Positions 19,772 through 26,035 of a stretch of 64,000 nt of DNA are shown one piece after another. A program made the position numbers and the translations under genes. Numbering within the stretch: the stretch's first letter is position 1; every line of letters starts with the position of its first letter. The DNA lies in IMG/VR virus record IMGVR_UViG_3300032268_000986, positions 124,001-188,000 of that record; one strand, written 5' to 3'. The notes under the pieces were generated by a model, which was given only the letters and a program-made list of their open reading frames with translations, made no database searches and was not told where the DNA came from.

Positions 19772-19800
19772 AGTATAACACAATTGTCAACGTTTTGCAA
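19772..19800 (-). promoter_or_regulatory. Sigma70-type promoter
   Basis: TTGCAA-17 bp-TATACT with TG extension, upstream of the GGAGAG RBS of 19751. Confidence 0.65.
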
Positions 19801-20596
19801 TTTGATGTTGCTCAAACTGACGACGCTGTTGCAATAACCATTCTGTTGTATTGGTCACACGGGTACGTTCTTGCCACTCTTGCCACATCACTTGTTGAAA
19901 CGGCTCAGTACTGTGTGCAAGGTTAACAATGTTTTCTAGCCCCAGTCTGCCTGCACCGCCTAGTCCATAGTTGATGTGAATACTTTCTCGAATCCGTCCA
20001 GGTGGTACTGGCAAAGTTTTGTGGACTTTTGGGTATCGATTGTCATTGATGTAGCCCCAGTTTGATTTAAACGGCACTGTGAAATACTGATCTTCTGGTA
20101 TGTCCAGATCAATCCGGTGTGAATCAAACATGGTAAAACAATGTTGATTGATTTCAGAATTCAAACAGAATTGTGTTCCCATGGCCGGCTCGTCAAAGTC
20201 TATCATGTACAACTGCACATTGACCAAGAATTCTGAGCTGTCAAAGTGTTTGAAGAAAAAACTGTTGCTGAAATCTTTGTAGCCACGCACTGAAGCAATG
20301 GCCAACTCACAACCAGTCAATTGGTTTAGCTTGGGAATCAAACTGCCCCCAAAATTGATAGCGTTGACCCAATTTTCAGATTCGCACACCAATCGATTGC
20401 CGTACCGGCTGCTCCACAAACTTTCAGTGCATCGCATTTCGCGACAGAGAACATCAAAGTATTCTGGAGACAAGAAATCTTGCAGCACCCAAAGGCTGGG
20501 AGAAACTTGCGTTTTGTTTTCCCAGTTGTACCGGGGTTCCACAATATCAGTAGCGGTAGAGATCACTCTTGAAAGGTCCGTTGCGGGCAATGCCAA
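19787..20596 (-). CDS. 2OG-Fe(II) oxygenase-like protein (start uncertain, possibly GTG 20542)
   Basis: KHFD (HxD), distal H in PKVHK, RES (RxS) in beta-strand context. Confidence 0.6.
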
Positions 20597-21848
20597 TGTA
20601 GCTGGCCTGACGATCAGTCAACATGGTCAATTGCACACCCAGTTGGTCCAGATGCAGTCTAGCAACTTCTTCGTCGATGTGCTTGGGCAACAGATGCACT
20701 TGGCCTGAAACATAGTCAGCGGTGCGATTGAACATTTCAATCTGAGCCAAGACCTGATTGGTAAAACTATTGCTCATGACAAAACTAGGATGCCCGGTAG
20801 CACAGCCCAAATTTACCAAGCGACCTTCGGCCAAGAGTATGATCTTGCGGCCATTGGGCATGTGAATCAAATCCACTTGAGGTTTGATGTTTTCCCAGCG
20901 ATATGGTTTGAGGCTGGCCACATCAATTTCAGTATCAAAGTGACCAATGTTGCACACAATGGCATTGTTTTTCATGGCATGCATGTGTTCGAACTTGATC
21001 ACATCCACGTTGCCTGTGGCAGTTACAAAGATGTCTGCTTTGTCGGCAGCATATTCCATTGTGACCACACGATAGCCTTCCATGGCAGCTTGCAGGGCAC
21101 AGATGGGATCAACTTCAGTGACCCAGACCTGGGCACTGAGAGCCTTCAAGGCCTGAGCTGAACCTTTGCCCACATCACCATAGCCGGCTACCACAGCCAC
21201 CTTACCGGCAATCATGAAATCGGTTGCACGTTTGATGGCATCCACAAGGCTTTCACGACAACCATAGAGATTGTCAAACTTGGTCTTGGTCACAGAATCG
21301 TTCACATTGATTGCTGGAATTTTCAGTGTGCCTGCTGCCACACGTTCTAGTAGTTTGTGAACACCAGTGGTGGTTTCCTCTGTCACTCCAAGAATACCAG
21401 GCAACAAATCAGGACGACGATCATGCACATAAGCAGTAAGGTCATGTCCGTCATCCAGCAGCATGTTGGGCTGCCAGTTGTTGGGACCTTGCAGTGTTTG
21501 CTCAATGCACCACCAGTATTCTTCTTCAGTCTCGCCTTTCCAGGCAAACACCGGAATGCCATTAACAGCCAGTGCTGCCGCGGCATGATCTTGTGTGGAA
21601 AAGATATTACATGAGCTCCAGCGTACTTCAGCACCCAGAGCAATCAAGGTTTCAATCAGTACAGCAGTTTGGATTGTCATGTGCAGGCTACCGGCAATGC
21701 GAGCACCTTTTAGTGGTTGTTCGCCGCGATAACGTTCACGTATTGCCATCAAGCCAGGCATTTCACCTTCGGCAATGACAATTTCTCTTTGGCCCCATTC
21801 GGCCAGGCCAATGTCGGCCACTCGGTAGTCTTGGGTTTGTGTGTTCAT
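20547..21848 (-). CDS. ahcY: S-adenosylhomocysteine hydrolase
   Basis: [68 protein letters not shown]. Confidence 0.98.
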
Positions 21849-21853
21849 AGACT

Positions 21854-21883
21854 ATTATATATGTTTCTACAAACACCATGCAA
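21854..21883 (-). promoter_or_regulatory. Sigma70-type promoter giving a near-leaderless ahcY mRNA
   Basis: TTGCAT-18 bp-TATAAT, ATG only 5 nt after the -10 box, no SD. Confidence 0.55.
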
Positions 21884-21886
21884 GGA

Positions 21887-22291
21887 TTATTTTTGGAAAT
21901 ATCCCCAGATCAAGAACCAAGCAATAACTGGGCCAAGATACAGCATCTGATATTGATGTCCGGTTCGGGCAAACAACTCGTCTCGTGTACATGCTCTACA
22001 GGTCCAGTTGTCAAACCACCAACCATCAGCTTCGCCAACCACATGATACCCATTGGTGGATTTTACCCGATGCAACCGATAGCGATGCAGAATCAACACG
22101 TTCCAGATAAAAGACCATATGTTGCTGCCGCACAGTAACCACAGCACGGTGATGCTGTAGTCATCGCAGTCACCGCGCAGCTGACCATCTTTCTCCTGCA
22201 TCACAAACCAGTAGTCGGTGAAGAAGCTCCTGGGATCACTTTGATAGTGAAACTTTTGATTCACTGTGTCAATTGCGTGTTCAAGTTGCAT
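21887..22291 (-). CDS. Transglutaminase-like cysteine peptidase family protein
   Basis: GDCDDYS...GYHVV...WFDN gives a Cys-His-Asp triad. Confidence 0.6.
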   Translation of the reverse strand: MQLEHAIDTVNQKFHYQSDPRSFFTDYWFVMQEKDGQLRGDCDDYSITVLWLLCGSNIWSFIWNVLILHRYRLHRVKSTNGYHVVGEADGWWFDNWTCRACTRDELFARTGHQYQMLYLGPVIAWFLIWGYFQK

Positions 22292-22303
22292 GATGTTGTT
22301 TGA

Positions 22304-22402
22304 TAGTGCTCACTTCCGGGATTCTGAGTAGCGAATTCAGCCGTCCCGCGCCAGCAGCCTGCGCACACTAGTGGTAACAAGTACCAGTCCTAAGGTGTGT
22401 TC
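22304..22402 (-). ncRNA. Candidate structured RNA (three hairpins plus pseudoknot), family unknown
   Basis: Fully intergenic; stems CACAC..UAG/CUA..GUGUG, UGGUA/UACCA, GCGCAG/CUGGCGC, GGGA/UCCC, CUGA/UCAG; loop UUCGCU complementary to downstream AGUGAG. Confidence 0.55.
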
Positions 22403-22404
22403 TT

Positions 22405-23307
22405 TTAAACCATGCGGCGCTTGATGGCACCTACCAAGGTAATTTGTTCCAACAAGGCCTTGCGGAAGTTGCGTTGAGCTTCGGTCATCTTGGCAGGGAA
22501 CTGCGCATTCACAAATGTCTTGACTCCGTTGAAGTCTTTTGCTGTTTTTGCTCGACGTACCATGTCAACGACTTTTTTCATCGCTTGTGGGCTAAATGCA
22601 GGACGTTGTGATGTCTGCGCGGTAGGCGCAGTCCAAGTTTTGTTGGCAGTCTTTTCTCGGGCAGCACGTTTGCGAATGGCATTGGGAGTCATGCTGACTT
22701 TACCGGCGACCTTGCCACCAGTTCGTTGTTTGACCGGTGTTGTGGCAGCGGCAGTAGTAGTTGCGGCAGTTTTGAGATTGGGGTTGTTGGGGTTAGAGGT
22801 ATGGCGAACTACTCCGCTGCCCACGCCCGAAACTCCTGTGGTAGTACCACCAGTGCTAGACGTAGTGGGTCTTGACGCCAACTGACTTGCCATGTTGCCA
22901 AATACACCTGCACCAGCACCTGGCTCCACAGTAGAAGTTGCAGCAGGCGCAGCAACTGAAGTAGCCCTGGTGGTAAATGCCGGGGTTGACATGTTTGGCA
23001 TGTTACTGGTTGGAACATTGTATGTTGTTGACTTGTACCCAGTAGTGGCTGCCGGTGCGCGGTTCAAGGGACGAATACCTTTGTTGGGAGTCTTGGGCAA
23101 ATACGGGGTGTTGGCAGATCCATCGGCCTTGGTCGTATCGGCCTTGGTCGTATCAGCCTTGGCTGTATCATTCCAGGTTGGTTCAACACGACCGTATGCA
23201 TCTGCACCATCGGCAAAATCATCACTGGTGTACAATTTTTTGGTGCGAGGATTGATTGACGCAGTCTGTGTGGTAATGGCTTCGTTGAATAATTCTGAAA
23301 CAATCAT
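22405..23307 (-). CDS. Low-complexity Thr/Ala-rich basic protein, putative internal head protein
   Basis: N-terminus MIVSELFNE resembles a capsid-targeting motif; largely disordered composition. Confidence 0.7.
   Translation of the reverse strand: MIVSELFNEAITTQTASINPRTKKLYTSDDFADGADAYGRVEPTWNDTAKADTTKADTTKADGSANTPYLPKTPNKGIRPLNRAPAATTGYKSTTYNVPTSNMPNMSTPAFTTRATSVAAPAATSTVEPGAGAGVFGNMASQLASRPTTSSTGGTTTGVSGVGSGVVRHTSNPNNPNLKTAATTTAAATTPVKQRTGGKVAGKVSMTPNAIRKRAAREKTANKTWTAPTAQTSQRPAFSPQAMKKVVDMVRRAKTAKDFNGVKTFVNAQFPAKMTEAQRNFRKALLEQITLVGAIKRRMV
23122..23166. repeat. 15-bp tandem repeat x3 (encodes KADTT-like units)
   Basis: atcggccttggtcgt atcggccttggtcgt atcagccttggctgt. Confidence 0.9.
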
Positions 23308-23308
23308 G

Positions 23309-24064
23309 TTATTTTTCTTCCAGGTAATCTTGGTTTTGTTGTTCTGGCTGTTGACGGCGCTGGAACAACTTTACAGCCATGTCGGCATGTGATAATTTGG
23401 GAAATCGTGTGGGCAGTTGACGTTGGCCATGACGAATTTCAAATCCTTGATCCTCATTGCCCCAGCACTCAAGCACTGTGCCATCTTCCATGGCATAGGT
23501 TTTGACCGGCTGCTGTGCAGCCACGACTGAGGTGGCCACTTGATCTTCAACATCATGTGCAACTTCACTGTCCATGGCAGAACCTTCTTCAGAGTCCCAG
23601 CCTTCTTCTACATCCTCTTCGGCTTGTTTCTGTTTCACAGCCGACTTGGCTTTGTCAATCAAATCACGGTCAACCCGAGCTTTCTTGGCCAGTTTATCTA
23701 GTTCAGGAGTTGAACGTTCACGACGGCCATCATCTCGATGGCTTATGGAATCTTCCAAACTATCCAAGTATGCATTGAGATCTTTCTTGACCTTGCTCAG
23801 CATGTCTTCTTCAACTTCTTGCATGGCTTCTTCGAGGCTGGACTTCTTGGGCTCCACTGAGTCGCCTACCATGTAACCGGCCATGGGATGTTTTTGATAG
23901 GGCTTCTTGGTCAATGTGGTAGAAATGTTCTTGGGCTTGAACAATGCCGGCAACTGAGGCACATCTCGTTGCTGTTGATTGAGTCCGTGCTTGACCGACA
24001 CCGGGGTAGTCTTACCCTCAATCAAGGCCAATCTCTCAATTATCTTGTAGATTGGATCACTCAT
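23309..24064 (-). CDS. Hypothetical protein (acidic/charged)
   Basis: Start MSDPIYK overlaps the dps stop (ATGA); contains LIE/LEE sites. Confidence 0.75.
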   Translation of the reverse strand: MSDPIYKIIERLALIEGKTTPVSVKHGLNQQQRDVPQLPALFKPKNISTTLTKKPYQKHPMAGYMVGDSVEPKKSSLEEAMQEVEEDMLSKVKKDLNAYLDSLEDSISHRDDGRRERSTPELDKLAKKARVDRDLIDKAKSAVKQKQAEEDVEEGWDSEEGSAMDSEVAHDVEDQVATSVVAAQQPVKTYAMEDGTVLECWGNEDQGFEIRHGQRQLPTRFPKLSHADMAVKLFQRRQQPEQQNQDYLEEK

Positions 24065-24501
24065 GCTCTGGCGTCTTTCAAATAACTGCGCAGTTGCCAA
24101 TGATATTTTCCGTGTTGACTCAGGCGCTGACTCACAAAGTCTGCAATGCCTTGTTGATTTTCTTGTTCAGCGTCAGCAAAGCATTGATTTAAAATTTCAA
24201 TCATCTGTTGATTGTTGGCCAGCAGTTCTTCCAGCATGAGCCTGGCACGAGGTATCTTGGTTTGTCCAGATATCTTTGTCAATTCGGCAAAACGTTCAAA
24301 ACTTCCTGGAGCATATTCATCTAGGTATCTGATGTATTCTGCGGTGGGGTCTATGGCCGAATAGGCATCTTCATAGATATTTTGAAAAAACTCATGCAAT
24401 TCACCAAAGTCAGGTCCTTCCACATTCCAATGGAACTGCTGAGCCTTTAGGTAATAGGCAAAATTACTTGCCAGGAGAGTTTTTAAAGTGTCCGCTAACA
24501 T
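24061..24501 (-). CDS. dps: Dps/ferritin-like DNA protection protein
   Basis: KAQQFHWNVEGPDFGELHEFF, D..AEYIR, HGKYHWQLRS ferroxidase-centre motifs. Confidence 0.92.
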   Translation of the reverse strand: MLADTLKTLLASNFAYYLKAQQFHWNVEGPDFGELHEFFQNIYEDAYSAIDPTAEYIRYLDEYAPGSFERFAELTKISGQTKIPRARLMLEELLANNQQMIEILNQCFADAEQENQQGIADFVSQRLSQHGKYHWQLRSYLKDARA

Positions 24502-24664
24502 TCTTGTTCCTTTTGTATTCCCGAGGCGTATTAGGCGTAGGATCAGTTGTATATTTACCATTTAGTAGAGAACCGCCTGATCTTGATACCATGCCCATGG
24601 GTTGTGCCACAGTGGCAATTGATCCTGAAGTAGTAGTCTCTGTCACAATGTCATGTACTTTCAT
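24464..24664 (-). CDS. Small hypothetical protein, putative internal head protein
   Basis: Starts MKVHDIVTE, a capsid-targeting-like motif. Confidence 0.65.
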   Translation of the reverse strand: MKVHDIVTETTTSGSIATVAQPMGMVSRSGGSLLNGKYTTDPTPNTPREYKRNKNVSGHFKNSPGK

Positions 24665-24955: not shown

Positions 24956-24984
24956 TATTTAGCCAAAATCTACGTCTATAAATA
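24956..24984. promoter_or_regulatory. Divergent pair of late-promoter motifs
   Basis: TAAATA on - (24961-24956) and TATAAATA on + (24977-24984) between divergent genes. Confidence 0.65.
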
Positions 24985-24991
24985 TCTCTAT

Positions 24992-26035
24992 ATGATCAAG
25001 TTCAATCAAATCACACGAGTACAGGTTGAGTTAACCACACGATGCAATGCTCGGTGTCCCATGTGTCCACGAAACTATCGTGGGTCAGACTACAACAGCG
25101 GATATCCCGTGACAGAGTTGTTGCTAGAAGATTTTAAAAAGATTTTTACTCCAAAGTTTTTACAACAATTGCGAGAACCTGCGGCTCCTCAGGATGGATT
25201 CAAGCATCGGTCATTCAAGTTCTACGGAGTGATGTTCAATGGAAATCTAGGTGACTTTGGCCTGGCTCGGGACGGAGTAGAAATTGTAGAATATCTTGTG
25301 GCACACAATGTACGTGTGATGATTAACACAAATGGCAGCATGCGAACTCCTGCTTGGTGGAGCCGCTTGGCCTTGCCCGGAGTAGAGATTGGGTTTGCCC
25401 TAGATGGGCTTGCTGACACCCATGGTCTGTATCGTCAAGACACTGACTGGAATCGTGTGATAGAAAACGCCCAAGCATTTATTGCAGCCGGTGGTCAAGC
25501 AGTGTGGAGATTTATTCCGTTTGATCATAACCGACATCAAGAACAACAGTGTCGTGACCTGGCCCAAGAATACGGCTTTGTTAAATTTGAAAACATATAT
25601 GATGGTAGAGACACCGGACCAGTGTTTACACGATCAGGTGAATTCAGTCACCAAATTGGGCATGATCCTTCGGGGGTGACTCCCACACTACAGCCCTTGC
25701 TGGAAAGTCATCAATCATGGTTCAATCACAAGACCATACGCATTGCCAAGGACAAACCTGACCTTGAATTGACCTGCATACACAAGGTCAATGAAGAAAT
25801 ATACGTGGCAGCAGATGGCACTGTGTACCCTTGTTGTTTCTTGGGATTTTATCCCACACAAATGCATCATCCCGGCAACGAACAAGTAAAAAACATTGTG
25901 CAGGAAAACTCAGCACTGAAGCATGGACTGGAACATGCCATGGCCTGGTTTGAACGTGTAGAACAATCTTGGAGTCATGGCAGCATTGCTGAAGGCAGAC
26001 TCTATAATTGTGTGAACAGTTGTGGAAAAATATGA
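24992..26035 (+). CDS. Radical SAM protein with SPASM/twitch-like domain
   Basis: [27 protein letters not shown]; paralog of 8625..9470. Confidence 0.87.

What the first reader, a model, noticed from the sequence alone, without database searches (positions are those of the whole stretch)
22304..22402. Unassigned ~100-nt structured RNA with a predicted pseudoknot
Seen (minus strand): ACACACCUUAGGACUGGUACUUGUUACCACUAGUGUGCGCAGGCUGCUGGCGCGGGACGGCUGAAUUCGCUACUCAGAAUCCCGGAAGUGAGCAC. It has three consecutive stems, and the third loop UUCGCU can pair with the 3' AGUGAG. It fills almost the whole intergenic gap in an otherwise gapless genome and is GC-rich. It does not fit tRNA, hammerhead or SAH-riboswitch consensus as I know them. 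Inference: a new cis-regulatory motif (it precedes the peptidase-ahcY genes), a ribozyme-like element, or a small ncRNA.
Basis: partly seen in the sequence, partly recalled or inferred. Interest (0 to 1): 0.66.

Follow-up and report, generated by a model that had tools for sequence, protein, structure and literature searches.

The report
Jumbo-phage pseudoknot RNA complementary to 23S
The flagged 100 bases are a real, previously undescribed folded RNA found in hundreds of giant bacteriophages, and its two never-changing loops are complementary, side by side, to one of the most conserved stretches of the bacterial large-subunit ribosomal RNA, so the phage RNA may act on the host ribosome.

Summary
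The element at 22306-22404 (minus strand) is real. It belongs to a large RNA family that Rfam 15 does not contain. I collected 165 distinct copies from uncultured freshwater jumbo phages. Copies also occur in the cultured Pseudomonas phages PA5oct and MIJ3. Covariation supports three hairpins (P1/P1a, P2, P3/P3a). G.U pairs outnumber A.C by 8 to 1, so the folded strand is the gene strand. The link to ahcY is local. In most relatives the element lies at the 3' end of a co-oriented ORF, just upstream of the sigma70-like promoter of a dsbA-like/DNA-polymerase operon. In PA5oct it lies just before an intrinsic terminator. The SAH-riboswitch and 5'-UTR readings therefore fail. Two loops are nearly invariant: L1 (CCUUAGGACC) and L3 (UUCGCUAC). 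They are reverse complements of abutting halves of 23S rRNA 1921-1937 (the 3' strand of helix 69 and the bases after it). Best inference (about 0.4): a 3'-UTR or small RNA that base-pairs with host 23S rRNA. The biological effect is unknown and expression is untested.

The parts
22306..22404 (-). Whole RNA element: conserved 5' flank AAGAA, three hairpins and a 3' tail
   Evidence: CM R1 match 22299-22411, 120 bits, E 3e-29. Single copy in the 342,865-bp phage genome. Coordinates.
22400..22404 (-). 5' flank AAGAA, directly after the TAA stop (22405-22407) of the upstream 300-aa ORF
   Evidence: AGAA precedes P1 in most copies, and the upstream stop codon lies 0-10 nt before P1 in most loci.
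22395..22399 (-). P1, 5' strand (CACAC)
   Evidence: Pairs with 22364-22368. It covaries: CACAC/GUGUG, UCACC/GGUGA, CACUC/GAGUG, ACUC/GAGU.
22386..22395 (-). L1, invariant block CCUUAGGAC(C/U). It is the reverse complement of 23S rRNA 1921-1930 (E. coli numbering). In the window the last base is U, giving U.G with G1921.
   Evidence: Exact in 46 of 50 copies that were not selected on this motif. The 12-nt consensus L1 block with its two flanking bases matches 23S 1920-1931 exactly (12 nt). Duplex -21 kcal/mol.
22372..22386 (-). P1a, a variable hairpin (UGGUA-CUUGU-UACCA) inserted 3' of L1
   Evidence: It covaries (CGGUA/UACCG, CAGUA/UACUG, CCGUUA/UAACGG) and is absent in the short forms of the family.
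22364..22368 (-). P1, 3' strand (GUGUG)
   Evidence: See P1 5' strand.
22349..22363 (-). P2 hairpin (CGCA / GGCG, with an A.G mismatch in the window copy) and its 7-nt loop L2 GGCUGCU (22353-22359)
   Evidence: All 4 pairs show double changes in A3, and 100% of cells are paired.
22353..22358 (-). Pseudoknot, 5' strand (L2 bases GCUGCU)
   Evidence: Pairs with 22308-22314. L2 and the tail co-vary in 15 L2 types, for example GGGUGCU with GUGACC in 9 of 9 copies. Permutation test 0/20,000.
22317..22348 (-). P3 (CGGGA/UCCCG), an internal loop, and P3a (CUGA/UCAG) closing L3
   Evidence: All 9 pairs covary in A3. Frequent G.U pairs fix the strand.
22328..22336 (-). L3, invariant loop AUUCGCUAC. UUCGCUAC is the reverse complement of 23S rRNA 1930-1937.
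   Evidence: Exact in 48 of 50 copies not selected on it. A 9-nt match at 23S 1929-1937 abuts the L1 site. Duplex -13.9 kcal/mol.
22308..22314 (-). Pseudoknot, 3' strand (AGUGAGC, with one bulged G) inside the conserved tail GAAGUGAGCAC (22306-22316)

Best explanation
The element belongs to an undescribed family of phage non-coding RNAs about 95-115 nt long. It is made from the gene strand, at the 3' end of a transcription unit, either as a 3'-UTR domain or as a small RNA. Shown: it folds into three directly abutting hairpins, locked by an H-type pseudoknot between loop L2 and the 3' tail. Stems and pseudoknot change freely by compensatory substitution, while two loops stay fixed. Shown: L1 and L3 are reverse complements of abutting halves of 23S rRNA 1921-1937 (the 3' strand of helix 69 and the bases after it). 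L1, which is 5' in the RNA, matches the 5' half of the target. L3, which is 3', matches the 3' half. The two loops could therefore clamp 17 contiguous rRNA bases. Inferred: the RNA works in trans by base-pairing with host 23S rRNA. The likeliest form of the target is nascent, unassembled or otherwise unfolded domain IV, because these bases are structured in the mature 50S. An invariant target in all hosts would explain why the loops are invariant in phages of different hosts. Not known: the consequence. It could block or steer late 50S assembly, tether the RNA to the large subunit, or guide a protein.
For: Family and fold: there are 165 distinct copies. They came from strict DNA patterns and from 64 of 80 loci fetched only by a neighbouring protein. 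In A3, 17 of 22 pairs show double changes (237 cells against 69 in shuffles, 0/500), and slid controls collapse to about 40% paired. The L2:tail pseudoknot gives 0/20,000 in a permutation test. Strand: 105 G.U against 13 A.C cells. All copies are co-oriented with the flanking genes. The PA5oct terminator lies on the same strand. Not known elsewhere: no Rfam hit, no tRNA, no paper holds these sequences, and a pattern scan of the GTDB species genomes gave only 2 chance hits. rRNA link: L1 has a 12-nt and L3 a 9-nt perfect complement at E. coli 23S 1920-1931 and 1929-1937. No shuffled L1 out of 300 reached 12 nt. The same target sequence occurs in a Latescibacterota MAG. No other GGTCCTAAGG site exists in G000, G001 or PA5oct. 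The L1 variant GGGCC keeps a G.U with U1923. The positions flanking the conserved blocks vary freely. Context: a stop codon abuts P1. A promoter (44 of 160 against 21 of 800 controls) or a terminator follows the element.
Against: No expression data could be obtained: no RNA run was listed, and the PA5oct copy is not among the four ncRNAs annotated from RNA-Seq. Bases 1921-1937 are paired or buried in mature ribosomes (established knowledge), so access is uncertain. Full pairing of a 9-nt hairpin loop is sterically demanding. In PA5oct and a subgroup (L253, L255, L312) the 5' part of L1 is itself paired with an internal UAAGG-containing strand, so L1 is not always free. A small lineage replaces L3 with CCGGGAAU. 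Thirteen of 80 related loci lack the element at this position, so it is dispensable or relocated. The benefit to a phage of binding 23S rRNA is unclear. Part of the data set was selected on L1 and L3, although the unselected sets agree.
Confidence: 0.4

Rival explanations
1. A protein- or RNA-polymerase-binding element at the 3' end of an operon. It would act as a terminator or insulator, a processive antiterminator, or a barrier to 3' decay. A phage protein would read L1 and L3, and the match to 23S rRNA would reflect ancestry only.
For: The element has a fixed position at the boundary between an upstream co-oriented unit and the promoter of the dsbA-like/DNA-polymerase operon. An intrinsic terminator follows directly in PA5oct, L021 and L075. 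In some copies L1 is paired inside the RNA.
Against: In the window, and in L004, L119 and L029, genes with no visible promoter follow the element within about 20 nt, so it cannot be a strong terminator there. A chance or purely ancestral explanation does not account for two loops that stay complementary to abutting rRNA halves over such divergence: the DNA polymerase of PA5oct-type phages is only about 43% identical. No partner protein was found.
Confidence: 0.27
2. A catalytic RNA. It could be a new self-cleaving ribozyme that cuts the polycistronic transcript. Alternatively it could be a trans-acting ribozyme or guide that uses L1 and L3 as recognition arms to cut or modify 23S rRNA near G1930.
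For: The architecture is typical of small ribozymes: covarying stems, a pseudoknot and a few invariant unpaired bases. The element sits between cistrons. The L1/L3 boundary falls at 1930/1931, a classic intron-insertion site in LSU rRNA (L1931; from memory, not checked).
Against: No match to any Rfam ribozyme family, even at E<=10. The element is single-copy and syntenic, unlike most phage ribozymes. Cleavage cannot be tested here.
Confidence: 0.12
3. A riboswitch or other 5'-UTR cis-regulator of the downstream 134-aa/ahcY genes that senses SAH or SAM.
For: ahcY (PF05221, E 7e-130) lies 440 nt downstream in the window. An invariant core with covarying stems also fits an aptamer.
Against: No hit to SAH, SAM-SAH or any other riboswitch model. 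ahcY follows the element only in the window and L001-type loci. Elsewhere the downstream neighbour differs, and a promoter or terminator usually lies between the element and the next gene.
Confidence: 0.02
4. A DNA-level signal, for example a single-strand initiation site or origin next to the replication genes, or a degenerate tRNA-like gene.
For: The element is adjacent to the DNA-polymerase module. Three hairpins recall G4-type single-strand initiation signals (from memory).
Against: In PA5oct the element lies 100 kb from the polymerase gene. The strand-specific G.U excess and the pseudoknot fit an RNA, although G.T pairs in single-stranded DNA cannot be excluded. ARAGORN and the Rfam tRNA model are negative. 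There is no similarity to T4 rnaC or rnaD.
Confidence: 0.04

Closest known systems
EBS2/EBS1 loops of group II introns pairing with IBS2-IBS1
   Same: Two separate loops, in 5'-to-3' order, pair with two contiguous target segments in the same 5'-to-3' order. The result is a split recognition clamp, not a linear antisense.
   Different: There are no group II domains: about 100 nt only, no Rfam intron hit and no domain V. The arms are 10 and 8 nt instead of about 6 each. The target is 23S rRNA, not an exon. Catalysis is not shown.
Box C/D and H/ACA guide RNAs of archaea and eukaryotes
   Same: A small structured RNA with conserved stretches complementary to a functionally central rRNA region.
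   Different: There are no C/D or H/ACA boxes (the CUGA in P3a covaries away). No such system is known in bacteria or phages. No partner enzyme was identified.
Ribosome-binding 3'-UTR elements of plant RNA viruses (e.g. the turnip crinkle virus T-shaped structure)
   Same: It is a 3'-proximal element made of several hairpins and pseudoknots, and the proposal is likewise that it engages the large ribosomal subunit.
   Different: Those act by tRNA-like shape in eukaryotic RNA viruses. Here the link is Watson-Crick complementarity to 23S rRNA in a dsDNA phage. Binding is untested.
SAH riboswitch (Rfam RF01057) and SAM-SAH riboswitch
   Same: A pseudoknotted RNA lying upstream of ahcY in this one window.
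   Different: No covariance-model match, a different architecture and conserved bases, and the ahcY association is not conserved in the family.
Phage T4 stable RNAs rnaC and rnaD, and 3'-UTR-derived bacterial sRNAs
   Same: A small phage-encoded RNA of unknown function at the end of a gene and before a terminator.
   Different: No sequence or structure similarity to rnaC or rnaD (best CM score 9.5 bits). Transcript ends are not known here.
HK022 put antiterminator RNAs
   Same: A phage RNA of stacked hairpins acting at an operon boundary upstream of terminators.
   Different: put has two hairpins, no pseudoknot and no rRNA complementarity. Similarity was not tested by a model; this comparison is from memory only.

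Membership tests
SAH / SAM-SAH riboswitch | Match to the family covariance model | tested here: not met
   No Rfam hit at gathering score or at E<=10 on either strand.
SAH / SAM-SAH riboswitch | Conserved position in the 5' UTR of SAH- or SAM-recycling genes | tested here: not met
   ahcY follows only in the window and L001-type loci. Other copies precede a promoter and a dsbA-like gene, other genes, or a terminator.
tRNA / tmRNA | Cloverleaf with an acceptor stem, detectable by ARAGORN or Rfam RF00005 | tested here: not met
   ARAGORN finds 0 genes in the window. No RF00005 hit. The 5' and 3' ends do not pair with each other; the tail pairs with L2.
Known small self-cleaving ribozymes (hammerhead, twister, twister-sister, pistol, hatchet, HDV-like) | Match to the class consensus structure and core nucleotides | tested here: not met
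   No Rfam match at E<=10. The CUGA in P3a covaries to CCCG or CUGG, so it is not a hammerhead core.
Self-cleaving ribozyme (any class) | Site-specific self-scission | not testable with these tools
   Needs an in vitro transcription and cleavage assay.
Intrinsic terminator | GC-rich hairpin immediately followed by a U tract | tested here: not met
   No terminator-like site at the element in the window. U runs follow only 37 of 160 copies, lie about 10 nt after P3, and are often just upstream of a -35 box. Separate canonical terminators follow in PA5oct, L021 and L075.
Group II intron | Six-domain ribozyme with domain V, besides the EBS loops | tested here: not met
   The element is about 100 nt and there are no Rfam intron hits in the window.
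Trans-acting base-pairing RNA directed at 23S rRNA (proposed kind) | Conserved unpaired bases complementary to the target beyond chance | tested here: met
   12-nt and 9-nt perfect complements at abutting sites, 23S 1920-1937. Shuffled L1 never reached 12 nt in 300 trials.
Trans-acting base-pairing RNA directed at 23S rRNA (proposed kind) | Expression as RNA and physical pairing with the target in infected cells | not testable with these tools
   No RNA run was listed. The PA5oct RNA-Seq study does not annotate this locus.

The most novel reading that the evidence does not exclude
Giant phages encode a dedicated guide-like RNA. Its two invariant loops clamp the universally conserved 23S rRNA segment 1921-1937 (the 3' strand of helix 69 and the bases after it). 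Through this, the phage would intercept large-subunit assembly or function, or direct a protein or catalytic activity to that site. This would be the first natural rRNA-directed guide or antisense RNA known in the bacterial or phage world.
Probability: 0.35. Interest if true: 0.92.

Novelty: categorically new. Interest (0 to 1): 0.82.

Why it matters
This would add a large RNA family to phage biology that has so far gone unnoticed. It has hundreds of members, strong covariation and a cultured representative (PA5oct) in which it can be tested at once. If the rRNA complementarity is functional, it shows a new way for viruses of bacteria to engage the ribosome: through RNA-RNA recognition of an invariant rRNA site. 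That would fit the many translation-related genes seen in huge phages. The split two-loop clamp on a 17-nt target is also a compact natural design for sequence-specific RNA recognition.

Tried and rejected
1. Rfam at gathering score and at E<=10 on the window, and at gathering score on 11 divergent loci: nothing on the element.
2. ARAGORN: no tRNA.
3. MFE significance: none, z = +0.41, so stability alone is no evidence.
4. Replaced by L2:tail.
5. My first idea that L2 (CGGCUGCUGGC) targets the 16S 530 loop: dropped, because L2 varies freely together with the tail.
6. Reading the U runs after the tail as a terminator: weak. They lie about 10 nt after P3 and often sit just upstream of a -35 box.
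7. Homology to T4 rnaC or rnaD: none.
8. Host-genome origin: a pattern scan of the GTDB species genomes gave only 2 chance hits, each scoring about 7 bits.
9. Cultured relatives Phosso, Atu_ph07, SCTP-2, Vibrio 2.275.O, 121Q, fHe-Yen9-03, SE_PL and pEa_SNUABM_47: no copy. The 14-bit hit in 121Q is judged false.
10. blastn of the element against GenBank phages: only chance hits.
11. Expression: no RNA run was listed, so no reads were laid.
12. Literature: no paper holds the motif sequences. The supplements of the 10,006 viral csRNA study are not held, so prior listing there cannot be excluded.
13. A target inside the phage genome: no GGTCCTAAGG site other than the element itself.
14. The 'peptidase' annotation of the 134-aa ORF: no Pfam or PHROG support.

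Full report
**1. The observation**

The quoted sequence lies on the minus strand. It fills the 113-nt gap (22292-22404) between a 300-aa ORF (22405-23307) and a 134-aa ORF (21887-22291). The window is part of a 342,865-bp, about 99% complete virus record, and the element occurs there once.

Alone, the sequence folds into three hairpins, but no better than shuffled sequence (-28.3 kcal/mol, z = +0.41). Rfam 15 has no match at gathering score or at E<=10, and ARAGORN finds no tRNA. From the single sequence, then, the structure could not be told from chance.

**2. Relatives show it is real**

Loci fetched through the flanking proteins carried the same element, with compensatory changes in all three stems. 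I collected more copies in several ways:
- Strict DNA patterns found 26 IMG/VR contigs and 31 metagenome contigs.
- A covariance model (R1) then found the element in 64 of 80 loci that were fetched only because they encode a relative of the dsbA-like protein.

In all there are 165 distinct copies.

On the protein-fetched set (A3, 50 distinct rows), 17 of 22 tested pairs show changes on both sides. That is 237 cells against 69 in shuffles (0/500). Sliding the partners by 1-3 columns drops pairing from 93% to about 40%.

G.U/U.G cells outnumber A.C/C.A cells 105 to 13, and every copy is co-oriented with its flanking genes. The folded strand is therefore the gene strand, which is the window's minus strand.

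**3. Anatomy (window coordinates)**

- **P1:** 22395-22399 with 22364-22368. It encloses the conserved block L1 (CCUUAGGAC[C/U], 22386-22395) and a variable hairpin P1a (22372-22386), which short family members lack.
- **P2:** 22360-22363 with 22349-22352, with the 7-nt loop L2 (22353-22359).
- **P3/P3a:** 22317-22348, with the 9-nt loop L3 (AUUCGCUAC, 22328-22336).
- **Tail:** a conserved stretch at 22306-22316.
- The hairpins abut with linkers of 0-1 nt.

The tail pairs with L2 instead. Examples of matched L2 and tail sequences:
- GGCUGCU goes with GUGAGC (one bulged G).
- GGGUGCU goes with GUGACC in 9 of 9 copies.
- GGCUACU goes with GUAGC or GUGGC.
- GGCCACU goes with GUGGC.
- GACUGCU goes with GAGU.
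- Quite different loops match as well: GGGAACCC with GGGUUC, UCUCCCUG with CAGGGAGA, and GCCCCAU with AUGGGGC.

Across 15 L2 types, each loop's own tail gives a mean duplex energy of -7.0 kcal/mol. Permuted tails give -3.6 +/- 0.6, and 0 of 20,000 permutations reach the real value. In the window the pseudoknot joins 22353-22358 to 22308-22314.

**4. Context**

By DNA polymerase, the closest cultured phages are the jumbo phages Phosso and Atu_ph07 (46-50% identity) and the Rak2/121Q/PA5oct group (about 43%).

In most copies the element follows directly on the stop codon of a co-oriented ORF. It lies 45-160 nt upstream of a dsbA-like gene followed by a T4-type DNA polymerase. In 44 of 160 copies a strict TTGACN-N16-18-TANNNT promoter starts 27-29 nt after L3, against 21 of 800 control windows. 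In L021 and L075 an intrinsic terminator follows instead.

In the window, three genes sit between the element and the dsbA-like gene: the 134-aa ORF, ahcY and a 269-aa ORF. The dsbA-like gene keeps its own TTGCAA-N17-TATACT promoter (19772-19800). Other relatives carry other insertions at the same place. The ahcY neighbourhood is therefore a local accident, and the element is not a 5'-UTR sensor for it. The 134-aa ORF has no Pfam or PHROG match.

A second model (R2, built from A3) found a copy in the cultured Pseudomonas phage PA5oct. It lies at MK797984.1 115458-115569 (33.6 bits, E 1.7e-7), and a copy is also present in MIJ3. In PA5oct the element:
- lies 100 kb from the polymerase gene;
- starts at the stop codon of EST35_0189;
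- keeps L1, L3 and an L2:tail pseudoknot (GCUGU with GCAGC);
- is followed at once by a canonical terminator.

It is not among the four ncRNAs annotated from RNA-Seq in that phage (PMC7318152). Eight other cultured jumbo phages lack it. So do the bacterial species genomes, as far as the strict pattern can see.

**5. The two invariant loops match 23S rRNA**

L1 and L3 are almost unchanged in copies that were not selected on them. L1 is exact in 46 of 50 and L3 in 48 of 50. The bases flanking them vary.

I compared both loops with the E. coli rrnH operon:
- The reverse complement of the consensus L1 block with its two flanking bases (12 nt) matches 23S 1920-1931 exactly.
- The reverse complement of L3 (9 nt) matches 1929-1937, directly abutting the L1 site.
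- No shuffled L1 out of 300 reached 12 nt.

The conserved cores cover 1921-1930 (L1) and 1930-1937 (L3), which is 17 contiguous bases: the 3' strand of helix 69 and the bases after it. I recognise this stretch from memory as the I-CeuI homing-endonuclease site, one of the most conserved stretches of LSU rRNA. It is identical in a Latescibacterota MAG.

Predicted duplex energies are -21 to -22 kcal/mol for L1 and -13.9 kcal/mol for L3. The window's own L1 ends in U, giving a U.G wobble with G1921. The rare variant GGGCC gives G.U with U1923. The rare L3 variant CCGGGAAU is complementary to 1938-1943. Neither phage genome has another GGTCCTAAGG site.

The loop order matters. The 5' loop matches the 5' half of the target and the 3' loop matches the 3' half. 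This is not a linear antisense. It is a split clamp, as with the EBS2/EBS1 loops of group II introns.

**6. Interpretation**

*Shown:*
- a new, widespread, pseudoknotted RNA family, read from the gene strand;
- its position at operon ends;
- bipartite complementarity of its invariant loops to one rRNA site.

*Inferred (about 0.4):* it acts by pairing with host 23S rRNA. An invariant target would explain invariant loops in phages of different hosts.

*Against this reading:*
- The target bases are structured in mature 50S subunits.
- Full pairing of a closed 9-nt loop is demanding.
- In PA5oct and in L253, L255 and L312, the 5' part of L1 is paired with an internal UAAGG-containing strand.
- Thirteen of 80 related loci lack the element at this site.
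- Expression is untested.

*Rivals:*
- a protein- or polymerase-binding 3'-end element (0.27);
- a ribozyme, possibly guided by L1 and L3 (0.12);
- a DNA-level or tRNA-like signal (0.04);
- the SAH/SAM riboswitch (0.02).

**7. Novelty**

No Rfam family, paper text or cultured-phage annotation covers this element. It may be among the unnamed 10,006 viral candidates of Fremin et al. 2023, whose supplements I could not read. The rRNA complementarity has, to my knowledge, no precedent in bacteria or phages.

Noticed in passing
window 19787-22291 (minus strand): The 134-aa ORF, ahcY (PF05221) and a 269-aa ORF sit between the RNA element and the promoter of the dsbA-like gene. Relatives carry different genes, or none, at this exact spot (radical SAM, small proteins with a conserved N-terminal motif). 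It behaves as an insertion hot spot for accessory genes.
   Followed up: partly
window 19772-19800 (minus strand): A sigma70-like promoter, TTGCAA-N17-TATACT, lies inside the 3' end of the 269-aa ORF, 20 nt upstream of the dsbA-like start. Equivalent TTGACT-N17-TATAAT promoters precede the dsbA-like gene in nearly all relatives.
   Followed up: partly
window 22405-23307 and upstream ORFs of L019, L022, L103, L114, L119: Many ORFs upstream of the element begin with M-x-x-x-E-[LFI]-x-x-E (MIVSELFNE, MFLTEMFNE, MNLLDIFTE, MKINELLTE, MRASEFIKE). From memory this resembles the capsid-targeting N-terminus of the T4 internal head proteins. They may be a variable family of packaged proteins.
   Followed up: no
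MK797984.1 (PA5oct) 115458-115640; locus L360 2959-3095: An unannotated copy of the RNA, followed by an intrinsic terminator (AGGAGAC-loop-GUCUCCU-AUUUUU), lies between EST35_0189 and EST35_0190. It is a ready experimental model.
   Followed up: partly
L255 5380-5493, L253 3416-3532, L312, and the PA5oct copy: In these copies P1 is formed by the L1 bases CCUUAG(G) pairing with an internal (C)CUAAGG or UUAAGG strand, which resembles the 23S target itself. This could be a built-in pseudo-target or a switch.
   Followed up: partly
window 24061-24561, 24992-26035, 20547-21848: The phage carries a Dps/ferritin-like gene, a radical SAM/SPASM gene (with TATAAATA at 24977-24984 just upstream) and an S-adenosylhomocysteine hydrolase. 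These are auxiliary metabolic genes, and some of them use or recycle SAM.
   Followed up: no
L281 3823-3947: A second, weak match to model R1 (23 bits, GC 0.33) lies 1.6 kb from the main copy in one contig. It could be a divergent paralogue or a false hit.
   Followed up: no
L130 about 14 nt upstream of the element: In one contig the element is preceded by non-coding AT-rich DNA with a T4-type late-promoter word, TATAAATA. There the RNA could have its own promoter.
   Followed up: no
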